Part shown: piece by piece, positions 487 to 17,485 of the stretch | Position numbering within the stretch: position 1 is the stretch's first letter | Layout: each line of letters opens with the position of its first letter | Sequence record: NC_042056.1 | Direction: 5' to 3' (one strand) | DNA length: 64,000 nt | Notes under the pieces: generated by a model | Database searches by the model: none | What the model was told of the DNA's origin: nothing | Seen by the model: only the letters and a program-made list of their open reading frames with translations | Program-made: the position numbers and the translations under genes

Positions 487-825
487 ATGTCTTCTCACGA
501 TAAACCGCTGATGCTGATTTACAATATCCAGTACACGCTGGATGAAATCGCCAACGCGTTGGGTAACACCCGGATTCCCAATATCCCGATTCTGAAGGAA
601 GTTGTTAGCAACGTTCAGATTCACCAATGGGATGGGTCTAACCACTGCACCGTAGCCGTCGTTACCACCCGCGGTCATATCTGCACGATGGATACATGGC
701 AAGAACCTAACGCAGAAAACCTGCACCGTGTTCTGAACGGTGCGTTGGAACACGCGTTGAAGAATGCAGCTCGGGCGTGGCTCGGTTCGCAAATCAACGG
801 TCTGTCCGACAACGTAGCGTTCTAA
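487..825 (+). CDS. hypothetical protein
   Basis: 112-aa ORF with a GGAG RBS, directly after the peptidase. Confidence 0.7.
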   Translation: MSSHDKPLMLIYNIQYTLDEIANALGNTRIPNIPILKEVVSNVQIHQWDGSNHCTVAVVTTRGHICTMDTWQEPNAENLHRVLNGALEHALKNAARAWLGSQINGLSDNVAF

Positions 826-858
826 AAAAGTCTAATTACAAGAATACCTTGTGATATG
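826..858 (+). promoter_or_regulatory. phage promoter driving tRNA-Trp (AAAAGTCTAATTACAAGAATAC-N7-TATG)
   Basis: The 22-nt motif is identical to 3994-4015 and has the same spacing to TATG. It resembles the phiKZ middle (AAanntTAC) and late (TATG) motifs. Confidence 0.6.
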
Positions 859-882
859 CTGAGAAGCACGTAAATGAATTTT

Positions 883-959
883 GGGGGAGTAGTTCAATTG
901 GCGAGAGCGTCGGATTCCAAATCCGGTTGTTGCAGGTTCGAGTCCTGTCTCCCCTGCCA
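883..959 (+). tRNA. trnW: tRNA-Trp (CCA)
   Basis: Cloverleaf with loop TT-CCA-AA, GTTCGAG T-loop and encoded CCA. Confidence 0.95.
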
Positions 960-1022
960 AATTTAGCCAGCAAGAATGTGAGAAACCGCGGAAGACCAAA
1001 TAGTCAATCGCTGGAGAATCTC

Positions 1023-1250
1023 ATGAACCTGTATTTGCTAGAACGTCAAGACGATGTCGGTTACGACGAGTTTGATTCCATAGTCGTTGCAGCTCCTTCG
1101 GAAGCTGTAGCGCGCGCAACGAAGCCCGGCTGGCGAGGGCGTTGGACTGATGTGTATTGCGACGAAGACGGAGTAATCCTGAGATGCGAACTCATTGGTA
1201 CCACGCACTTAGAGGCTGGGGTCGTCCATGCATCGTTCAATGCAGGCTGA
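1023..1250 (+). CDS. small hypothetical phage protein
   Basis: GGAG RBS before ATG 1023 (MNLYLLERQDDVGYDEFDSIVVAA). The ORF-track start at 927 lies inside the tRNA. Confidence 0.7.
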   Translation: MNLYLLERQDDVGYDEFDSIVVAAPSEAVARATKPGWRGRWTDVYCDEDGVILRCELIGTTHLEAGVVHASFNAG

Positions 1251-1280
1251 ATACCGGTGGGCTTCGGCCCACCACACCTT

Positions 1281-1354
1281 GGGGCGCTGGCCGAGTGGTT
1301 AGGCGCTGGATTGCAAATCCTGTTACCGCGGTTCGATTCCGCGGCGTCCCTCCA
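1281..1354 (+). tRNA. trnC: tRNA-Cys (GCA)
   Basis: GGGGCGC/GCGTCCC acceptor, TT-GCA-AA loop, U discriminator, CCA. Confidence 0.93.
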
Positions 1355-1496
1355 AATCTTCTGTCTCGCCCGACAGATATACTTTACAAAAAAACCCGTA
1401 GAGCCTTTCGGGGGTGAAGCTAGTTGGAGTGGTTGTTCACTCTACGGTCTTCTACTCCTGGGCGCTGGCTCACCCACCTAAAGGATAAAAAGAATT

Positions 1497-1922
1497 ATGT
1501 TCGGTCTTTTCAAAAAACGCGCTAACCGTGCTATGTCTGAAATCAAAAAATTCGACAAACGTGACCTGGCAGAAGCCGTGGTTAACGCCGCTTACCTGAT
1601 TGCGTACGCGGATGGCGAGCTGGAATCTTCTGAGAAATCGAAAATCGATCAGGTGCTGCGTGCCAACCCGGTACTGTCTAACTTCCAGTCCGAGCTGAAC
1701 ACAATTGCTTCTACAATCATCGCTCAGCTGGAAGCGGACATCGACATCGGTCGTCGTGCTGCCCTGCGCCAGATTGCTGATGTGAAAGGCGACCAGCGCG
1801 AGTGTGAAGACGTTCTGGACGTTGCTGTGGCTATTGCCCGTGCTGATGGCGAAATCGAACCGGCAGAAGTTGAAATGCTGAAACAGATCGCCGAAGCGCT
1901 GGGTCTGCGTTACGACGCGTAA
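1497..1922 (+). CDS. terB: TerB-family (tellurite-resistance-like) protein
   Basis: Motifs LIAYADGELESSE and AIARADGEIEPAEVEMLKQIAEALG. Confidence 0.85.
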   Translation: MFGLFKKRANRAMSEIKKFDKRDLAEAVVNAAYLIAYADGELESSEKSKIDQVLRANPVLSNFQSELNTIASTIIAQLEADIDIGRRAALRQIADVKGDQRECEDVLDVAVAIARADGEIEPAEVEMLKQIAEALGLRYDA

Positions 1923-1925
1923 GCC

Positions 1926-2108
1926 ATGAAGCTGAAAACCAAGTTATACATCGGGGCCGCGTTGCTACTGATGCTGCTTGGCAACTTCGTTGGGCGAGCC
2001 TTTACGTTAATCGCCTACGTAGCTGTAATCGGCGTAGTAGCCTATCTGGCCTGGCCTGTCATCAAGAAGTTTGCGGCGAAGTCGCAGGCGAAGGTGAAAG
2101 GCAAGTAG
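1926..2108 (+). CDS. small membrane protein
   Basis: 60 aa with two hydrophobic segments and a basic tail, in an operon with terB. Confidence 0.7.
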   Translation: MKLKTKLYIGAALLLMLLGNFVGRAFTLIAYVAVIGVVAYLAWPVIKKFAAKSQAKVKGK

Positions 2109-2115
2109 TAATTCG

Positions 2116-2148
2116 GTGCGGGGGTCGTTCCCTCCGCACCACCCTTTT
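2116..2148 (+). terminator. intrinsic terminator-like hairpin
   Basis: GGTGCGGGGG/CCCTCCGCACC stem followed by TTTT. Confidence 0.55.
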
Positions 2149-2174
2149 ATTCTCATCTAAAAATAGGTATAACC

Positions 2175-3014
2175 ATGAGAAAGGTGCTTTTCGGAATACT
2201 TGCAGCGTTGACGTTTAGCATGTCCGCAGTCGCGGCAGACGAAGTAGTGATTACCACAGGACAGCAGGGCCTGACCTATAACTCGGTCTATGGCGTTAAT
2301 CTGGCCGGTGCCATCAGCGAGTTCGGTACTCGTGCACGGGTCATCCCGTCGAAGGGGTCGTTAGACAACCTCGATAAAGTTGCCGCCGGTGAAGCCCAGA
2401 TTGGTTTCACGCAGGCAGATGCTTTCCAGTTCTGGCGCGCTAAGCACCCGAACGAAGCGCAGAACGTTGACATCGTCGGTCAGCTGGCCCGTGAATGTGT
2501 CTGGGTCGCTGTCAAGAAAGATGGCAAAGTTAAAGATGCGAAAGATTTAACCGATGGCGTGAAAATCGCAGTCGGTGAACCGGACTCTGGCTCCTACGCC
2601 AGTTGGCAATATCTGCAACAGTTGGTGAAAGAGTATTCCAAAGCGGAAACTTACGCCAAGGGCGGTATCCGTTCGTTGTCCAAAGTGGCAACGGGTGAAT
2701 ACGACGCATTCCTGTGGGTATCTGCGCCGGATAAAAGCAACAAATTCCTCGAAGCGGTCAATCAAGACAGTTCTGGTTTAGAGCTGATTGACATGAGCAC
2801 ATGGAACGTCAACGACAAACTGCCTAACGGCCAGTCTGTGTATACGAAAGAAACGGCCAAGACAGACAAGACCGCGTTCTTCGGTAAGAAAGTTGATGTT
2901 CCGTGCACCACCACACTCGTCGTGGCCAACACTGACGCTGGTGATGATCTGCTCGAAACCGTTTCTACCATCCTCCTGAAAAACAATTCACGAGTGATGG
3001 GGGACAAAAAATAA
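2175..3014 (+). CDS. TAXI-family TRAP solute-binding periplasmic protein
   Basis: Signal peptide plus motifs ITTGQQGLTY, SKGSLDNL, IGFTQAD and IAVGEPDSGS. Confidence 0.8.
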   Translation: MRKVLFGILAALTFSMSAVAADEVVITTGQQGLTYNSVYGVNLAGAISEFGTRARVIPSKGSLDNLDKVAAGEAQIGFTQADAFQFWRAKHPNEAQNVDIVGQLARECVWVAVKKDGKVKDAKDLTDGVKIAVGEPDSGSYASWQYLQQLVKEYSKAETYAKGGIRSLSKVATGEYDAFLWVSAPDKSNKFLEAVNQDSSGLELIDMSTWNVNDKLPNGQSVYTKETAKTDKTAFFGKKVDVPCTTTLVVANTDAGDDLLETVSTILLKNNSRVMGDKK

Positions 3015-3020
3015 AAATAT

Positions 3021-3668
3021 GTACTGACCCAGTGCATCTTTTCGGGCTGGGTAGGGTTAATGTCCCTACCTGCGCGGTGTTCGTTAAGGCTGGTAACGTT
3101 CGCTAAGACCTATCGCATACCCGTAAGTCGATAGCAGCCGGTTACACAAAGAACTATCCATGTGGTAGGTAACCGACCGTTCACGATCTCATTAGGTGAG
3201 CAAATAATCTATGCAAGGACTTCTAGGATTTGTGCTCGACATGATGGGCAGCTTACGCCGCCTCATCAAGCAGTTACGAATCTGGAAGCTTGCCCATTAC
3301 TGGTTTACAGGCGAAAAGGCATCTCGTGAGAGTGTGCCATGCAAACTGCGTATTTACATTAGTATGTTCACTGCGGTGAGCATAGGTCAAGCCCCGGAAC
3401 GATAAGCCGGTCAGCTACGCCTGTAAAATACAATCTGAAAATCATAATGGGATTAAGTTCCCAGATTTGAAAAGGCGACTGTGTGTCGTCGGCGATAACC
3501 CCCCGTCGTGGACTCGGTTATCCCAAAGGTAATGTGAAAGGGGTTGGTGCTTGGAGGCGCTAAGACCGGCGGATACGCTGGCTCAGAAGAAGAAGTCCAT
3601 CAACCCCGTTCTCACCTGAGTAACACCCTTTACAAGGCGTTACTTATATATGCGAAAGCGAGGTGAAC
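3021..3668 (+). ncRNA. putative large (~650 nt) structured ncRNA
   Basis: Intergenic, with more than 12 helices and three nested long-range pairings (see findings). Confidence 0.7.
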
Positions 3669-3995
3669 ATGGGAATGTATCGTGAAGGCCCTGAAAGCAC
3701 GGTGACTCACCGTAATCATGATTACTCTGTGGATGCATTGCTGGATATAGCGGAACGTCATAGCCTCGTTCAAATTCCAGTGTCTAGAATAGAATGGATT
3801 TTAAACGAGACTACGCTCGATGATGAGCGGGTTAAGAATGCAGATACGGATTATCCAATAATCGTGCTGCACGAAGGAAGTTTGTATATTGTATTAGACG
3901 GTGCCCATCGCCTTGCGAAGGCGGTAGCCGAAGGCAAAGACACCATCGCAGCCAAGATATTGGTGCCTGCGAATTTACCGAAACCGGTACGATAA
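3663..3995 (+). CDS. ParB/Srx-like domain protein
   Basis: YPIIV...IVLDGAHRLAKA motif. Start is GTG 3663 or ATG 3669. Confidence 0.75.
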   Translation: MNMGMYREGPESTVTHRNHDYSVDALLDIAERHSLVQIPVSRIEWILNETTLDDERVKNADTDYPIIVLHEGSLYIVLDGAHRLAKAVAEGKDTIAAKILVPANLPKPVR

Positions 3996-4026
3996 AAGTC
4001 TAATTACAAGAATACACTGTATTATG
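3994..4026 (+). promoter_or_regulatory. second copy of the tRNA-cluster promoter
   Basis: 22-nt exact repeat of 826-847 with TATG at 4023-4026. Confidence 0.6.
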
Positions 4027-4113
4027 TCGGAAACCCGATTTGATGTTGCACAGAGCGTTACGCTGCGGCGTTTGCTGGTGTGCAGGGTTAGGTCGGGATT
4101 CTGGCACCTATTT

Positions 4114-4199
4114 GGCGGGTTACTCAAGCGGTCAACGAGAGCAGACTGTAAATCTGTTGCCTTCGGGCTTCGTAGGTTCAAATCCTTCACACGCCACCA
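4114..4199 (+). tRNA. trnY: tRNA-Tyr (GTA)
   Basis: CT-GTA-AA loop, long variable arm and CCA, with one acceptor-stem mismatch. Confidence 0.9.
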
Positions 4200-4205
4200 A
4201 ACAAT

Positions 4206-4425
4206 GGTACCTGTCACAGCAGCCCTTGAGGCTTACGCGATGATGACTGGTCGCCCATTTTACCGGGTAACACATTCCTGCCAGCGCGCTATTGCCGCGA
4301 AGGTTTGCCCCCGGTGTTGTGCGTTATTCGGGTCTACCCACCATCTGCGGATGGTGCGTTGATGTCTCGATATACGCCATAGGGACGCCTTGAGAACTCC
4401 GTGAAATTCGGAGAGGTACCACCCA
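4206..4425 (+). ncRNA. ~220-nt RNA with tRNA-like acceptor stem and T-arm
   Basis: GGTACCT(4206-12)/AGGTACC(4414-20), immediately preceded by CTCCG-TGAAATT-CGGAG; ends ACCCA. Confidence 0.6.
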
Positions 4426-4429
4426 TTCT

Positions 4430-4494
4430 TGTGTTTCCTTATCCTGAAGACATTCCTAAGACAAATTCATTCATGGTCGAGGAAACACAGAACC
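4430..4494 (+). ncRNA. 65-nt stem-loop motif, copy 1
   Basis: 10-bp stem with a 40-nt loop that is conserved with 5563-5629. Confidence 0.65.
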
Positions 4495-4500
4495 TATTCA

Positions 4501-4576
4501 GGTGCTATCGTCTAGTGGCCGAGGATACTACCCTGTCACGGTAGAGACCGGAGTTCGATTCTCCGTAGCACCGCCA
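4501..4576 (+). tRNA. trnD: tRNA-Asp (GTC)
   Basis: Canonical cloverleaf, CT-GTC-AC, CCA. Confidence 0.95.
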
Positions 4577-4584
4577 TTTTCAAA

Positions 4585-4660
4585 TGCGTCTTAGCTCAGT
4601 TGGTAGAGCGCACCCCTGATAAGGGTGAGGCCACTGGTTCAAGTCCAGTAGATGCAACCA
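4585..4660 (+). tRNA. trnI: tRNA-Ile (GAT)
   Basis: Canonical cloverleaf, CT-GAT-AA, CCA. Confidence 0.95.
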
Positions 4661-4667
4661 GTATTGC

Positions 4668-4744
4668 ATTCCCGTCATCTAGTTGGTCCAGGATACGACA
4701 CTTTCACTGTCGGTACACGAGTTCAAATCTCGTCGGGAATACCA
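4668..4744 (+). tRNA. trnE: tRNA-Glu (TTC)
   Basis: Canonical cloverleaf, CT-TTC-AC, CCA. Confidence 0.95.
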
Positions 4745-4749
4745 TTTGT

Positions 4750-4840
4750 AGAGAATTGACTGAGTTGGTTTAAGGTGCTCCCCTGCTAAGGGAGTGTATG
4801 CGAAAGTGTACCATTGGTTCGAATCCAATATTCTCTGCCA
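4750..4840 (+). tRNA. trnS: tRNA-Ser (GCT)
   Basis: CT-GCT-AA, long variable arm, G discriminator, CCA. Confidence 0.95.
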
Positions 4841-4841
4841 T

Positions 4842-5015
4842 GTTCTCTTGCTGTGGGAAATAGAAGCGAACGTAGAAACGCCGGTTAGCTCAAAGCTTAG
4901 AGCGTCTCATCTTCGGATGAGAAGGTTGGGGGCGCAACCCGAAATCCCTATCGGCAACGGCCTGCTTGTCAGGATTAGAAACATCTACGTGGATGGGTAC
5001 TTCTACAGCAAGAAC
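4842..5015 (+). ncRNA. ~175-nt RNA containing a tRNA-like domain with a UUCG-capped anticodon arm
   Basis: 13-bp terminal stem (4846-58/5001-13) and a 7-bp inner stem enclosing a cloverleaf at 4879-4957. Confidence 0.65.
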
Positions 5016-5018
5016 AAA

Positions 5019-5140
5019 ACAGTGGGAGCATTGTCCACTGTGACACCGGCAAAGGTTTCGACCTTGCGGGTTGGGCGGAAGCCCGATGTTCCCCCGAACG
5101 CTGGCCTTCTGGCCAATACAGTGAAAGCTTACCCTTGCCG
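5019..5140 (+). ncRNA. putative structured RNA
   Basis: Several hairpins, two with UUCG and GGAA tetraloops, closed by CGGCAA/TTGCCG. Confidence 0.4.
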
Positions 5141-5221
5141 ATGATCACCTCTTCTGCTGCTGCCAACACACTGTATAACCAGAATCAGTCCTGCCTTAAA
5201 TGGCAAGCGTTCACCCTTTAC

Positions 5222-5299
5222 GTTTCCTCAAGGCGGCTTGGGGTGTTATCTCTCGGCTCTGTTGGGTAACATCGTGGTTCAACTCCATGGGAAACACCA
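5222..5299 (+). tRNA. tRNA-like RNA / pseudo-tRNA without a canonical anticodon loop
   Basis: GTTTCC/GGAAAC acceptor, TTCAACT T-loop and CCA, but a 9-bp arm with a 12-nt loop. Confidence 0.6.
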
Positions 5300-5305
5300 A
5301 ACAAT

Positions 5306-5397
5306 GGCTCCGTAGCTAAATCGGTAGAGGCAGACTTTAATTAGTTCTCCAACGATTTTATAATCGCGTGGTGTAGGTTCAAGTCCTACCGGAGCAA
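5306..5397 (+). pseudogene. degenerate class II (Leu-like) tRNA
   Basis: Acceptor, D-region and T-arm are present. The anticodon arm has a 6-nt TTAATT loop and there is no CCA. Confidence 0.55.
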
Positions 5398-5474
5398 GAG
5401 CACTGCTGTTAAGTTGGTTAACACCCGACCCATACTCGGATATTCGCACGTTCGATTCGTGCCAGTGCTCGCCC
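5398..5474 (+). tRNA. tRNA with CAT anticodon (Met or Ile2), atypical
   Basis: CC-CAT-AC loop (C at 33), 8-bp acceptor pairing, GTTCGAT T-loop; ends GCCC. Confidence 0.7.
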
Positions 5475-5481
5475 TTATTTA

Positions 5482-5557
5482 GACTCTGTAGTTCAGTTGG
5501 TAGAACGGTGGACTGTTAATCCATATGTCGCAGGTTCGAGTCCTGCCAGAGTCGCCA
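5482..5557 (+). tRNA. trnN: tRNA-Asn (GTT)
   Basis: Canonical cloverleaf, CT-GTT-AA, CCA. Confidence 0.95.
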
Positions 5558-5562
5558 CATTT

Positions 5563-5629
5563 TGCATTGCCCGAGTCCCGAATGACATTCCGGAAAAATA
5601 TCATCCATGGTCACGGGCAGTGCAGAACC
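5563..5629 (+). ncRNA. 65-nt stem-loop motif, copy 2
   Basis: 11-bp stem with a different sequence from copy 1 and a conserved 40-nt loop. Confidence 0.65.
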
Positions 5630-5664
5630 AAAATCCCAGCCTTCGCAGAAAAAGCTTACCTGCA

Positions 5665-5784
5665 TTAGCGGTCCCCTGCGGGGGTTGGGTACCACCTTTG
5701 TCCGTTTTGTTTTTTTCTTTCAATTGCCTGGCGGTATTGGTGGGAACAAAACGGGTAAAGCCCTAGCGGGGGAAAAGCCGTTAA
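5665..5784 (+). ncRNA. rod-like structured RNA or 5' leader
   Basis: 16-bp helix 5696-5711/5745-5760 plus outer helices 5665-72/5777-84 and 5673-77/5768-72. Confidence 0.5.
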
Positions 5785-5828
5785 CAACAACAGAAGCAGT
5801 AAAAACAGAAGTAAAAGCAGGAGTAGTT

Positions 5829-6641
5829 ATGTTTACTATCTTACGCAAAATCAATGGTAACCGCACACCAACCGAACACGAATCCCCTACGCTGGGTGAT
5901 ACGAAGTCACAAGTGTTCAAAGATGCGATGTCGCTTCTTACCGAATCCAATAACGTGCATAACTGCATGGATTCTGGGATGGATGCGAAGCCGTGGATTA
6001 ACGGCAAACCCAAACCGATTGAGGAGTGGGTAGAGCGCTTTAAGAAAGCGTACGGCGCGACAGACTCAGACAACCAAGAACTGGTTTCTCTGGTCAGTGA
6101 ACTCGCACCGGGAATGTTTGACAAAGCCAATGCGCGTTTTGCATCGGACTTTGGTCAACTGGAAGAAGCCTTCCTGAAAGATACCGGGCAAACTATCATC
6201 TGGAAATGTCCGAACGGACTCCCGATTGATATCCAGTTCCAAAACATTCCCCGTCAGTCTGTTGAAACACTACATACCACGCTCGATTTCATCGAAGCGG
6301 ATGAGTTGAAGTTTGCGGTGTTCAACAGCAAGGCGTTGTGGGATGGGTATAACTCCGCTGAACTGTTTGGCGGTGAAGCCACCGAGATTTCCTCGGTAGA
6401 ACTCCAACACGTTTACTTTGACGATACGGCCATGCCGCAAGAAGCGGTGCTCAAAGCCAACCGTCGTGGTACCCGCACTATGGAACAGGTCATCGGGGTG
6501 CTTGCTTATGGCAGCTCCGAACAACCCGACCCAACCACAGGCAACGTGCCGGTCACAGTGATGACCTACGAGTTTATCTACCAAGGCGATGAAGTCTACA
6601 TTACGAACCGTCACGGTAAGACCGTGGACTCCATCCGTTAA
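5829..6641 (+). CDS. hypothetical protein
   Basis: AGGAG RBS before ATG 5829. The ORF-track extension to 5607 overlaps structured RNA. Confidence 0.75.
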   Translation: MFTILRKINGNRTPTEHESPTLGDTKSQVFKDAMSLLTESNNVHNCMDSGMDAKPWINGKPKPIEEWVERFKKAYGATDSDNQELVSLVSELAPGMFDKANARFASDFGQLEEAFLKDTGQTIIWKCPNGLPIDIQFQNIPRQSVETLHTTLDFIEADELKFAVFNSKALWDGYNSAELFGGEATEISSVELQHVYFDDTAMPQEAVLKANRRGTRTMEQVIGVLAYGSSEQPDPTTGNVPVTVMTYEFIYQGDEVYITNRHGKTVDSIR

Positions 6642-17395: not shown

Positions 17396-17485
17396 AATGA
17401 GGTAATTGCACCCTTTCGAGTGCAATTACAAGTTATTCCCTATTATATGTAAACCGGAATGGTTTACGGGGGAGGGAGTAAATTC

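What the first reader, a model, noticed from the sequence alone, without database searches (positions are those of the whole stretch)
883..5784. tRNA island that also carries a suite of non-tRNA structured RNAs and anticodon-less tRNA mimics
Seen: nine recognisable tRNAs are interleaved with at least eight other compact structured elements, all on the + strand behind two identical promoters. Four elements keep the acceptor/T-arm half of a tRNA but lack a normal 7-nt anticodon loop (4206-4425, 4879-4957, 5222-5299, 5306-5397). Established: T4 and T5 tRNA clusters contain stable non-tRNA RNAs of unknown function, and hosts use anticodon nucleases (PrrC, RloC, VapC, PARIS, retron effectors) against phages. 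Inference: this may be an RNA-based counter-defence or translation-control system, made of replacement tRNAs, uncleavable elbow/acceptor mimics and a large scaffold RNA.
Basis: partly seen in the sequence, partly recalled or inferred. Interest (0 to 1): 0.82.

Follow-up and report, generated by a model that had tools for sequence, protein, structure and literature searches.

The report
Phage tRNA region with tRNA-mimic RNAs
The tRNA region of the Erwinia jumbo phage Machina holds, besides nine tRNA genes and six protein genes, several conserved and unannotated RNA structures, among them tRNA-shaped RNAs that cannot read codons; their function is unknown.

Summary
The window is bases 1-64000 of Erwinia phage Machina, an SPN3US-like jumbo phage. 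All nine decoding-type tRNAs are there. About 45% of the span is protein-coding (gp4, TerB, a 60-aa ORF, a TAXI solute-binding protein, gp9, a ParB-like protein).

It is flanked by a 5' leader and a 225-nt 3' domain that both show strong compensatory base changes.

Three of the four proposed mimics belong to families conserved across three or four phage genera. These are B (4206-4425), T1 (5222-5299) and T2 (5306-5397). Their acceptor and T stems covary, while the anticodon region is replaced or varies widely. The fourth (4880-4956) occurs only in close relatives. A hairpin present in two copies (H) also covaries. None of these matches an Rfam family.

Neutral decay of pseudogenes is therefore unlikely. 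Transcripts, processing and any counter-defence role remain untested. My best reading is a tRNA/small-RNA operon. Its non-tRNA RNAs carry a tRNA "top half", so host tRNA-maturation enzymes release them, and they act through that half. I rate it a new variant of a known kind (T4 RNAC/RNAD, YrlA-type mimicry).

The parts
829..858 (+). Promoter-like motif, copy 1, upstream of tRNA-Trp
   Evidence: 22-nt core identical to copy 3. The pattern TTACARG-N10-17-TATG occurs 4 times in 64 kb, all on +, against 0.4 expected. The same position is occupied in 10 relatives. Promoter function is inferred.
883..959 (+). tRNA-Trp(CCA), CCA encoded
   Evidence: ARAGORN; Rfam 61.8 bits
1023..1250 (+). gp4, 75-aa protein of unknown function
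   Evidence: Annotated; PHROG 5444, E 4e-32; annotated at the same place in relatives
1281..1354 (+). tRNA-Cys(GCA), CCA encoded
1355..1496 (+). Conserved leader of the TerB gene with predicted hairpins
   Evidence: 86-100% identical in 10 relatives. Structure not tested comparatively.
1497..1922 (+). TerB-domain protein
   Evidence: Pfam PF05099, E 1e-16
1926..2108 (+). 60-aa ORF (DUF3927/TciB-like according to relatives' annotation)
   Evidence: Annotation. No Pfam hit at E<=0.01 here.
2115..2140 (+). Terminator-like hairpin with a T run
   Evidence: 10 pairs, 8 of them G-C
2175..3014 (+). TAXI/NMT1-type solute-binding protein
   Evidence: Pfam PF16868, E 4e-16
3103..3210 (+). Structured 5' leader of gp9: two hairpins (3110-3134 and 3140-3174)
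   Evidence: 17 pairs, 99.7% paired across 20 sequences, 13 pairs with changes on both sides; partners slid by 1-3 columns give 2-5. No Rfam match.
3211..3405 (+). gp9, conserved small ORF (64 aa here, 55-69 aa in relatives)
   Evidence: Open in 21 of 21 homologous loci with the same stop position; the length differences visible inside the ORF in the DNA alignment are multiples of three. dN/dS is 0.17-0.46 for 9 of the 11 pairs compared inside the sequence groups and 0.70 and 0.79 for the other two. The second codon position is the least variable. No Pfam hit.
3388..3612 (+). Structured 3' domain after gp9 (four hairpins; the last spans 3540-3607)
   Evidence: Found in all 28 homologous loci by nhmmer. 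42 pairs, 98.6% paired, 14 pairs with changes on both sides; slid controls give 0-6. Many G-U pairs, so the structure is specific to the + strand. No Rfam match at E<=10.
3623..3652 (+). Promoter-like motif, copy 2 (diverged), upstream of the ParB-like gene
3663..3995 (+). 110-aa protein annotated as ParB-like
   Evidence: Annotation; PHROG 17560; no Pfam hit. Absent from pEa4, Caitlin and ChrisDB, where the 3' domain lies next to tRNA-Tyr.
3997..4026 (+). Promoter-like motif, copy 3, upstream of tRNA-Tyr
4114..4199 (+). tRNA-Tyr(GUA), CCA encoded
4206..4425 (+). B RNA: tRNA-shaped, with a 7-bp acceptor-like stem (4206-4212/4414-4420) stacked on a 5-bp arm with a 7-nt loop (4397-4413), an ACCC tail, and a branched arm of about 130 nt in place of the anticodon arm
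   Evidence: 12 homologues in Machina-, Seoul-, Erskine- and Wellingtonvirus. 22 pairs, 95% paired, 8 with changes on both sides. A compensated inner hairpin among close relatives. Fold z = -2.6. No Rfam match. The motif hits elsewhere in IMG/VR are chance matches in coding DNA.
4426..4497 (+). H hairpin, copy 1 (trailer after B)
   Evidence: Paralogue of 5560-5636. 18 pairs across 12 sequences, 8 with changes on both sides, frequent G-U pairs.
4501..4840 (+). tRNA-Asp(GUC), Ile(GAU), Glu(UUC), Ser(GCU), each with CCA encoded
4880..4956 (+). tRNA-shaped element with a 6-bp acceptor, a D arm, a 7-bp stem capped by a tetraloop in place of the anticodon arm, a 4-bp 'T' stem with a 14-nt loop, and no CCA
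   Evidence: Rfam tRNA only 13.6 bits. Present only in close relatives. In pEa43 the central hairpin is a different sequence that still pairs. The annotated ORF gp16 over it does not keep its frame in three relatives.
4957..5221 (+). Hairpin-rich spacer, with a 37-nt stretch (5181-5217) conserved in distant relatives
   Evidence: The structure has only weak support (z = -1.9).
5222..5299 (+). T1 RNA: tRNA-like with a 7-bp acceptor, a short D arm, a standard T loop and an encoded ACCA; the anticodon arm is a 9-10-bp stem with a 12-nt loop
   Evidence: No tRNA hit in Rfam at E<=10. ARAGORN calls it only at 85% threshold, with a fold that relatives contradict. A homologue in pEa29 has different but paired stems: 24 pairs, 8 with changes on both sides.
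5306..5397 (+). T2 RNA (annotated as tRNA-Ile(AAU)): acceptor with a G-A mismatch at its first position, standard T arm, mismatched anticodon stem, an extra arm of about 30 nt, no CCA
   Evidence: Rfam 31.4 bits against a cut-off of 29; ARAGORN structure. An element at this exact place, one base before the CAU tRNA, exists in all relatives whose CAU-tRNA neighbourhood I read (12 phages). In an alignment of ten, all 6 acceptor pairs and 3 of 5 T-stem pairs show changes on both sides and none is broken. The middle differs in length and sequence from phage to phage.
5399..5470 (+). tRNA(CAU) (Met or Ile2 type), no CCA encoded
   Evidence: Rfam 38.9 bits. Called tRNA-Met in relatives. Machina's copy differs from most relatives by two substitutions in the anticodon loop, of unknown effect.
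5482..5557 (+). tRNA-Asn(GUU), CCA encoded
5560..5636 (+). H hairpin, copy 2 (trailer after tRNA-Asn; this is the ancestral position)
5637..5828 (+). Leader of gp19, whose likely true start is 5829
   Evidence: Relatives annotate 813-nt genes. 5558-5828 is 68-97% conserved.

Best explanation
Bases 829-5828 are the tRNA and small-RNA region of the jumbo phage Machina. The region is a mosaic of nine decoding tRNA genes, six protein genes and at least six families of conserved RNA structure.

Three families (B, T1, T2) and one clade-restricted element (4880-4956) are tRNA-shaped RNAs. They keep the tRNA 'top half': a 6-7-bp acceptor stem stacked on a T arm, with an ACCA or ACCC tail in T1 and B. 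They have lost a codon-reading anticodon loop.

Proposed mechanism:
- The region is transcribed rightward from three copies of a phage-specific promoter-like motif.
- Host tRNA-maturation enzymes (RNase P at the 5' side, 3' trimming and CCA addition) cut out the tRNAs.
- Because the mimic RNAs have the same top half, the same enzymes release them as stable small RNAs.
- The mimics then act through that top half, on proteins that read the acceptor end or the elbow of tRNA rather than on the ribosome's decoding site.

Separately, gp9 is a small protein gene whose mRNA carries a structured leader and a 225-nt structured 3' domain.

Shown: the structures, their conservation, the covariation, the synteny and the lack of decoding features. 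Inferred: transcription, processing, stability, and that the top half is the working part. Unknown: the partner protein and the benefit to the phage.
For: - Identity and layout.
- tRNAs.
- Top-half geometry (7+5 bp) and tails.
- B family: 12 homologues in four genera, 8 of 22 pairs with changes on both sides, 95% paired.
- T1: homologue in a Seoulvirus with all stems re-paired, 8 of 24 pairs.
- T2: acceptor 6 of 6 and T stem 3 of 5 pairs changed on both sides with none broken, while 2-4 sequences break each pair but one of the middle stem and its loop length varies.
- Fixed order T2, tRNA(CAU), tRNA-Asn, H in the phages where H was found.
- H: 8 of 18 pairs.
- gp9 flanks: 13 of 17 and 14 of 42 pairs, against 0-6 in slid controls.
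- Frequent G-U pairs fit an RNA made from the + strand.
- Promoter-like motif only on the + strand and at conserved positions.
[quoted passage not shown] T4 makes two small RNAs of unknown role from its tRNA region (PMC3014915 and PMC9697503).
Against: - There are no expression data, so no transcript, end or modification has been seen.
- T2 and the CAU tRNA lack an encoded CCA.
- B's T-like loop lacks the standard T-loop letters, and 4880-4956 has a 14-nt T loop, so recognition by tRNA enzymes is uncertain for those two.
- Covariation rests on 4-21 related sequences and on my own slid-partner controls, not on a tree-aware test.
- 4880-4956 and much of 4957-5221 are known only from phages that are 93-100% identical.
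- Selection on the top half could be purely cis-acting, for correct cutting of neighbouring tRNAs, with no trans-acting role.
- No candidate partner gene is visible in the window.
Confidence: 0.5

Rival explanations
1. The structures are only cis-acting parts of the precursor transcripts. They would be cutting handles, spacers and stabilisers that make the neighbouring tRNAs mature correctly, plus untranslated regions that control gp9, TerB and gp19. The excised pieces would have no role of their own.
For: T2 always sits one base before the CAU tRNA, which itself lacks an encoded CCA. H always follows a tRNA-type 3' end. The leader and the 3' domain flank a conserved ORF. B and T2 are both preceded by the same short spacer.
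Against: A cutting handle does not need a conserved D arm, a standard T loop and an encoded ACCA (T1). It also does not need an inner body of 45-135 nt with conserved motifs kept across four genera (B). Most of the ordinary tRNAs here lie 3-12 bases apart with no such handle between them.
Confidence: 0.22
2. One reading: a dedicated RNA-based counter-defence set. Spare tRNAs would replace cleaved host tRNAs, and uncleavable acceptor/elbow mimics would soak up host tRNA-targeting defence enzymes.
For: The mimics are real and under selection on the top half. The anticodon region of T2 changes very fast between close relatives, as would be expected under an arms race or under no constraint. The tRNA sets differ from phage to phage. 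A review lists prevention or reversal of tRNA cleavage as a proposed role of jumbo-phage tRNAs (PMC13282480).
Against: No direct evidence exists. RNAs without an anticodon loop are poor decoys for anticodon nucleases; they could at most mimic targets of enzymes that act on the acceptor end. No defence-related or tRNA-repair gene is annotated nearby. The supposed scaffold RNA is a protein gene with structured flanks.
Confidence: 0.15
3. The odd elements are decaying tRNA pseudogenes and neutral spacers left by rapid gain and loss of tRNA genes in this array.
For: tRNA content differs between close relatives: Gln, His, Phe, Leu and Gly come and go. 4880-4956 and the long form of T2 are limited to near-identical phages. 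Machina's CAU tRNA carries two loop substitutions.
Against: Neutral decay would break acceptor and T stems as fast as anticodon stems. Instead those stems are kept by changes on both sides across genera in which flanking non-coding DNA is no longer alignable. B has no tRNA-like body at all, yet it is conserved in four genera.
Confidence: 0.1
4. T1 and T2 are working tRNAs with unusual anticodon loops, used for recoding (frameshift or stop-codon reading).
For: Both have good acceptor and T arms. T1 has an encoded ACCA. T2 passes the Rfam tRNA cut-off.
Against: Loop sizes are 3-4, 6, 7, 9, 11-12 and 18 nt in different phages, with no shared anticodon-like triplet in a standard context. T1 gets no Rfam tRNA score.
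Confidence: 0.03

Closest known systems
Phage T4 RNAC and RNAD (species 1 and 2 stable RNAs of the T4 tRNA region)
   Same: Small non-tRNA RNAs encoded among phage tRNA genes, with an unknown role (PMC3014915; detected by Northern blot, PMC9697503).
   Different: The Machina region has more families, and several of them are clearly tRNA-shaped.
YrlA / bacterial Y RNAs (Rfam RF02553), tRNA mimics bound by the Ro60 orthologue Rsr
   Same: A tRNA-like module with acceptor, T and D arms and no decoding function. One member is cut by RNase P and receives CCA. Some members are phage-encoded (PMC4201824).
   Different: The Rfam model does not match any of the elements. Its only weak hit (25.7 bits against 69) spans two real tRNAs. 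In YrlA the RNA ends lie in the Ro-binding stem; here they lie in the acceptor stem. No Ro60 gene is annotated in the window.
ROOL and GOLLD large ornate RNAs
   Same: Structured RNAs of unknown role in phage or prophage DNA. I recall that they often lie next to tRNA genes. The papers on these RNAs were only listed and were not read.
   Different: No Rfam match. The 520-nt conserved block here is not one RNA fold. It is a small ORF with a 110-nt leader and a 225-nt 3' domain.
tmRNA
   Same: The RNA ends form an acceptor stem next to a T arm, and the anticodon arm is replaced by a long body (topology of B).
   Different: ARAGORN finds no tmRNA. B is 125-220 nt long. It has no G-U pair at the third acceptor position, and no tag reading frame was found.
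C4/CI antisense RNAs of phages P1, P7 and P4, released by RNase P (from my own knowledge)
   Same: Small phage RNAs whose tRNA-like fold lets RNase P release them from a longer transcript.
   Different: No Rfam match. A search of the window for a target complementary to the T1 loop found only the loop itself.

Membership tests
tRNA (Rfam RF00005 / ARAGORN) | Cloverleaf scoring at or above the curated cut-off (29 bits) | tested here: not met
   B: no hit at E<=10. 4880-4956: 13.6 bits. T1: no hit. T2 alone passes, at 31.4 bits.
tRNA (Rfam RF00005 / ARAGORN) | 5-bp anticodon stem with a 7-nt loop in the standard context | tested here: not met
   The four elements have, in turn, a branched insertion, a tetraloop, a 12-nt loop, and a mismatched stem. 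In relatives the loops are 3-18 nt.
tRNA (Rfam RF00005 / ARAGORN) | 7-bp acceptor stem stacked on a 5-bp T stem with a 7-nt loop | tested here: met
   B 7/7, T1 6-7/7, T2 6/7 acceptor pairs, each with a fully paired 5-bp T stem. 4880-4956 fails on the T loop.
Phage tRNA-region stable RNAs (T4 RNAC/RNAD type) | Encoded within a phage tRNA gene cluster, on the same strand | tested here: met
Phage tRNA-region stable RNAs (T4 RNAC/RNAD type) | Detected as discrete stable transcripts during infection | not testable with these tools
   No expression data for Machina or its relatives were found.
Phage tRNA-region stable RNAs (T4 RNAC/RNAD type) | Sequence or structure homology to RNAC/RNAD | not tested
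   No comparator sequence was fetched, and Rfam returned no such family.
YrlA / Y RNA | Match to the Rfam RF02553 covariance model | tested here: not met
   Only a 25.7-bit hit (cut-off 69) across two real tRNAs. Nothing on B, T1, T2.
YrlA / Y RNA | Encoded next to a Ro60/Rsr gene | tested here: not met
   No such product in the annotation of 1-58000. The rest of the genome was not examined.
tmRNA | Recognised tRNA-like domain plus tag reading frame | tested here: not met
   ARAGORN finds none.
ROOL / GOLLD / RNase P RNA / group I intron / riboswitch leaders | Match to any Rfam model for 3015-3662 | tested here: not met
   No relevant hit at E<=10.
Protein-coding gene (gp9, 3211-3405) | Reading frame kept in relatives, in-frame length changes, purifying selection | tested here: met
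   21 of 21 open with the same stop. dN/dS is 0.17-0.46 for 9 of the 11 pairs compared inside the sequence groups, and 0.70 and 0.79 for the other two.

The most novel reading that the evidence does not exclude
SPN3US-like nucleus-forming jumbo phages carry a clade-wide kit of at least five conserved 'tRNA-scaffold' RNA families (B, T1, T2 and the 64-, 70-, 98- and 118-nt families seen in relatives), plus a small-protein/RNA module. After release by the host's tRNA-processing enzymes, these RNAs would act as top-half mimics. They would titrate or redirect host proteins that act on the acceptor end or elbow of tRNA, for example immune effectors that modify or cut the 3' end. This would be a form of RNA-level host manipulation not yet described for phages.
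Probability: 0.2. Interest if true: 0.85.

Novelty: new variant of a known kind. Interest (0 to 1): 0.62.

Why it matters
Phage tRNA clusters are usually annotated as tRNAs plus 'hypothetical proteins'. In this cluster at least six RNA families with clear compensatory evolution are missing from Rfam. Some of them are annotated as proteins or as an impossible tRNA-Ile(AAU). The mimics give a concrete, sequence-defined set of candidates for asking what non-decoding tRNA look-alikes do in infection. That question has stood open since T4's RNAC and RNAD were found. The pattern 'top half conserved, anticodon half free' says which part of the molecule selection acts on, and so which class of partner to look for. 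On the practical side, the results correct several annotations in this phage group: gp16, the gp19 start, tRNA-Ile(AAU) and the missed CAU tRNA.

Tried and rejected
1. One large scaffold RNA at 3100-3620. I first read the 520-nt conserved block as a single ROOL-like RNA. I rejected this after finding an ORF kept in 21 of 21 homologues with signs of purifying selection.
2. RNase P RNA, tmRNA, group I intron, 6S, riboswitch or Y RNA for any element. No Rfam hits even at E<=10, and ARAGORN finds no tmRNA.
3. B as a tRNA interrupted by an intron. The insertion is 45-135 nt, too short for a group I intron, and no anticodon-loop halves flank it.
4. ARAGORN's relaxed call of T1 as tRNA-Glu(CUC). The substitutions in pEa10 and pSal04 break that fold and support the long-stem fold.
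5. gp16 (4848-5144) as a real gene. Its frame is not kept in three relatives, and it lies over hairpins.
6. Sigma-70 promoters. There are no more than in shuffled sequence.
7. An antisense target for the T1 loop. None in the window.
8. A wider distribution of B. The extra IMG/VR pattern hits are chance matches inside coding DNA.
9. Literature on structured RNAs of SPN3US-like phages. None found.

Not done:
- The expensive protein-database searches for gp9, which I judged peripheral.
- A covariance-model search of metagenomes.
- The count of structure pairs, because a structure string of several hundred characters would have had to be typed. I used fold_alignment and my own pair counts with slid controls instead.

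Full report
**Identity.** The query 800-5900 is 100% identical to Erwinia phage Machina (KX397370 / NC_042056, genus Machinavirus, 241.6 kb) at the same coordinates. The window is therefore the first 64 kb of that genome. The rest of the window encodes split multisubunit RNA polymerase genes and virion proteins typical of phiKZ/SPN3US-like jumbo phages. All tRNA genes of the window lie in the first 5.6 kb.

**What the span holds.**
- ARAGORN calls nine genes.
- Rfam gives ten tRNA hits above its cut-off when the region is searched alone.
- Reconciling the two gives eight clean tRNAs (Trp, Cys, Tyr, Asp, Ile-GAU, Glu, Ser-GCU, Asn), a CAU tRNA at 5399-5470 that ARAGORN finds only at a relaxed threshold, and an aberrant element at 5306-5397 that both tools score as a marginal tRNA.
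These are gp4, a TerB-domain protein, a 60-aa ORF, a TAXI-type solute-binding protein, gp9 and a ParB-like protein.

**Promoter-like motif.**
- The two 'identical promoters' share a 22-nt identical core.
- A looser pattern built from them occurs four times in 64 kb, at 836, 3630, 4004 and 17426. All four are on the + strand, against 0.4 expected.
- In ten relatives the motif sits at the same two or three places, never on the other strand.
- It does not resemble a sigma-70 promoter. These phages bring their own RNA polymerases.
- That it is a promoter is an inference.

**The conserved block at 3100-3620.**
- BLAST and nhmmer find it next to the tRNA array in every relative fetched: Machina-, Seoul-, Erskine- and Wellingtonvirus, plus IMG/VR contigs.
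- RNAalifold finds many compensated pairs, and Rfam has nothing for it even at E<=10.
- I first took it for one large RNA.
- However, an ORF of 55-69 codons is open in all 21 aligned sequences and ends at the same stop. The length differences visible inside it in the DNA alignment are multiples of three.
- Its dN/dS is 0.17-0.46 for 9 of the 11 pairs compared inside the sequence groups, and 0.70 and 0.79 for the other two. Its second codon position is the least variable.
- The block is therefore a small protein gene (gp9, 3211-3405) flanked by two structured parts.
- The 5' leader has two hairpins: 17 pairs, 99.7% paired, 13 with changes on both sides.
- The 3' domain is about 225 nt: 42 pairs, 98.6% paired, 14 with changes on both sides.
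- When partners are slid by 1-3 columns, only 27-47% of cells pair and 0-6 pairs show such changes.

**B (4206-4425).**
- A 7-bp stem closes the RNA and stacks directly on a 5-bp stem with a 7-nt loop. This is the 7+5 geometry of a tRNA acceptor/T helix. A-C-C-C follows it.
- Twelve homologues, 125-226 nt long, share this frame, a second covarying helix and a conserved junction. The arm that stands where the anticodon arm would be is 45-135 nt long and varies.
- 22 pairs are 95% paired, and 8 have changes on both sides.
- B occurs once per genome and only in this phage group.

**T1 (5222-5299).**
- T1 has a 7-bp acceptor, a short D arm, a standard T loop and an encoded ACCA.
- Its 'anticodon arm' is a 9-10-bp stem with a 12-nt loop.
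- Three adjacent pairs of that stem are exchanged together between Machina and pEa10.
- The homologue in the Seoulvirus pEa29 has different letters in the acceptor and anticodon-arm stems and still pairs: 24 pairs, 8 with changes on both sides.

**T2 (5306-5397).**
- T2 is the local form of an element that lies one base upstream of the CAU tRNA in all relatives whose CAU-tRNA neighbourhood I read (12 phages).
- In an alignment of ten of these phages, all six acceptor pairs and three of five T-stem pairs show changes on both sides, with no broken pair. All but one of the middle-stem pairs are broken in 2-4 sequences each. The middle part ranges from a 4-bp stem with a tiny loop to loops of 6-9 nt, an unrelated replacement, or a long extra arm as in Machina.
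- A G-A mismatch at the first acceptor position is shared by all of them.

**4880-4956.**
- This element has a tetraloop hairpin in place of the anticodon arm, a 14-nt T loop and no CCA.
- It is known only from near-identical phages.
- The one informative relative carries a different hairpin that still pairs.
- Its status is open.

**H.**
- A hairpin of about 75 nt follows tRNA-Asn in the eleven phages where the pattern search found it (seven of them in the alignment). In the Machina subgroup it also follows B.
- 18 pairs, 8 with changes on both sides, and many G-U pairs.
- G-U pairs would be A-C mismatches on the other strand, so this structure, like the 3' domain, is read from the + strand as RNA.

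**Wider census.** A scan for paired T arms plus acceptor stems shows that every phage of the clade has several further tRNA-shaped elements that ARAGORN does not call. They fall into recurrent size classes of 63-64, 70, 98 and 118 nt. The phenomenon is a property of the clade, not an accident of Machina.

**Interpretation.**
- Neutral decay of tRNA genes should erode acceptor and T stems as fast as anticodon stems. The data show the reverse, so selection acts on the top half.
- The top half is what RNase P and the CCA-adding enzyme recognise. [quoted passage not shown] It also shows a tRNA-like module of a Y RNA being cut by RNase P and given CCA in vivo.
- I therefore propose co-transcription with the tRNAs, release by the host's tRNA-maturation enzymes, and action through the top half.
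- Whether the released RNAs act in trans or are only cutting handles cannot be settled from sequence.
For nucleases aimed at the anticodon it is mechanistically awkward.
- The closest precedent is T4's RNAC and RNAD, small RNAs from the T4 tRNA region whose roles remain unknown (PMC3014915, PMC9697503).

**Limits.**
- There are no expression data.
- Covariation rests on 4-21 related sequences, with slid-partner controls rather than a tree-aware test.
- For locating homologues I built a profile HMM from alignment A1 in the scratch folder.
The consensus lines printed by the alignment tool were not used.

Noticed in passing
window 5607-6641: gp19 is annotated from 5607 (344 aa), but relatives annotate an 813-nt gene. 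An ATG at 5829 with a good ribosome-binding site gives exactly 813 nt. The long version would run through the covarying H hairpin.
   Followed up: partly
window 4848-5144: The annotated 'hypothetical protein' gp16 lies over hairpin-rich RNA. Its frame is not kept in three close relatives, which do not annotate it. It is probably not a gene.
   Followed up: yes
window 17426-17480: A fourth copy of the promoter-like motif lies in the gap between gp36 and the oppositely oriented gp37. A short hairpin follows it, and no + strand gene is annotated for the next 1.3 kb. This may be another small RNA.
   Followed up: no
window 5399-5470 and 5306-5397: The CAU tRNA and T2 lack an encoded CCA, whereas the other eight tRNAs and T1 encode it. 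In pEa6, pEa4, ChrisDB and pEa9 the CAU tRNA carries an extra arm of about 23 nt, and ARAGORN no longer calls it.
   Followed up: partly
L002:3800-3870 (pSal-SNUABM-04), compared with window 3470-3530: The third hairpin of the 3' domain in pSal-SNUABM-04 has the sequence type of SPN3US rather than that of its own genus. This suggests exchange of a single hairpin by recombination.
   Followed up: no
L013:3666-3783 and 4146-4263; L016:4346-4463; L012:4014-4130: A family of 118-nt tRNA-shaped RNAs has standard D and T arms, covarying acceptor stems, a long arm of about 60 nt in place of the anticodon arm, and in two of the four copies an encoded CCA. It is absent from Machina. One copy is annotated as tRNA-Ile(AAU).
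   Followed up: partly
L002:5460-5557, L014:4905-5002, L008:4887-4984: A 98-nt tRNA-shaped element that ARAGORN does not call, and further 63-64-nt and 70-nt families, recur in several relatives.
   Followed up: no
window 4200-4205 and 5300-5305: The same six-base spacer precedes both B and T2 (each time after an ACCA end). It also precedes B-family and T2-type elements in relatives. It may be a shared processing context.
   Followed up: no
window 5399-5470: The Rfam scan of the whole 64-kb window at gathering threshold loses this 38.9-bit tRNA hit, which the 9-kb scan finds. This is a filter effect worth remembering for annotation.
   Followed up: yes
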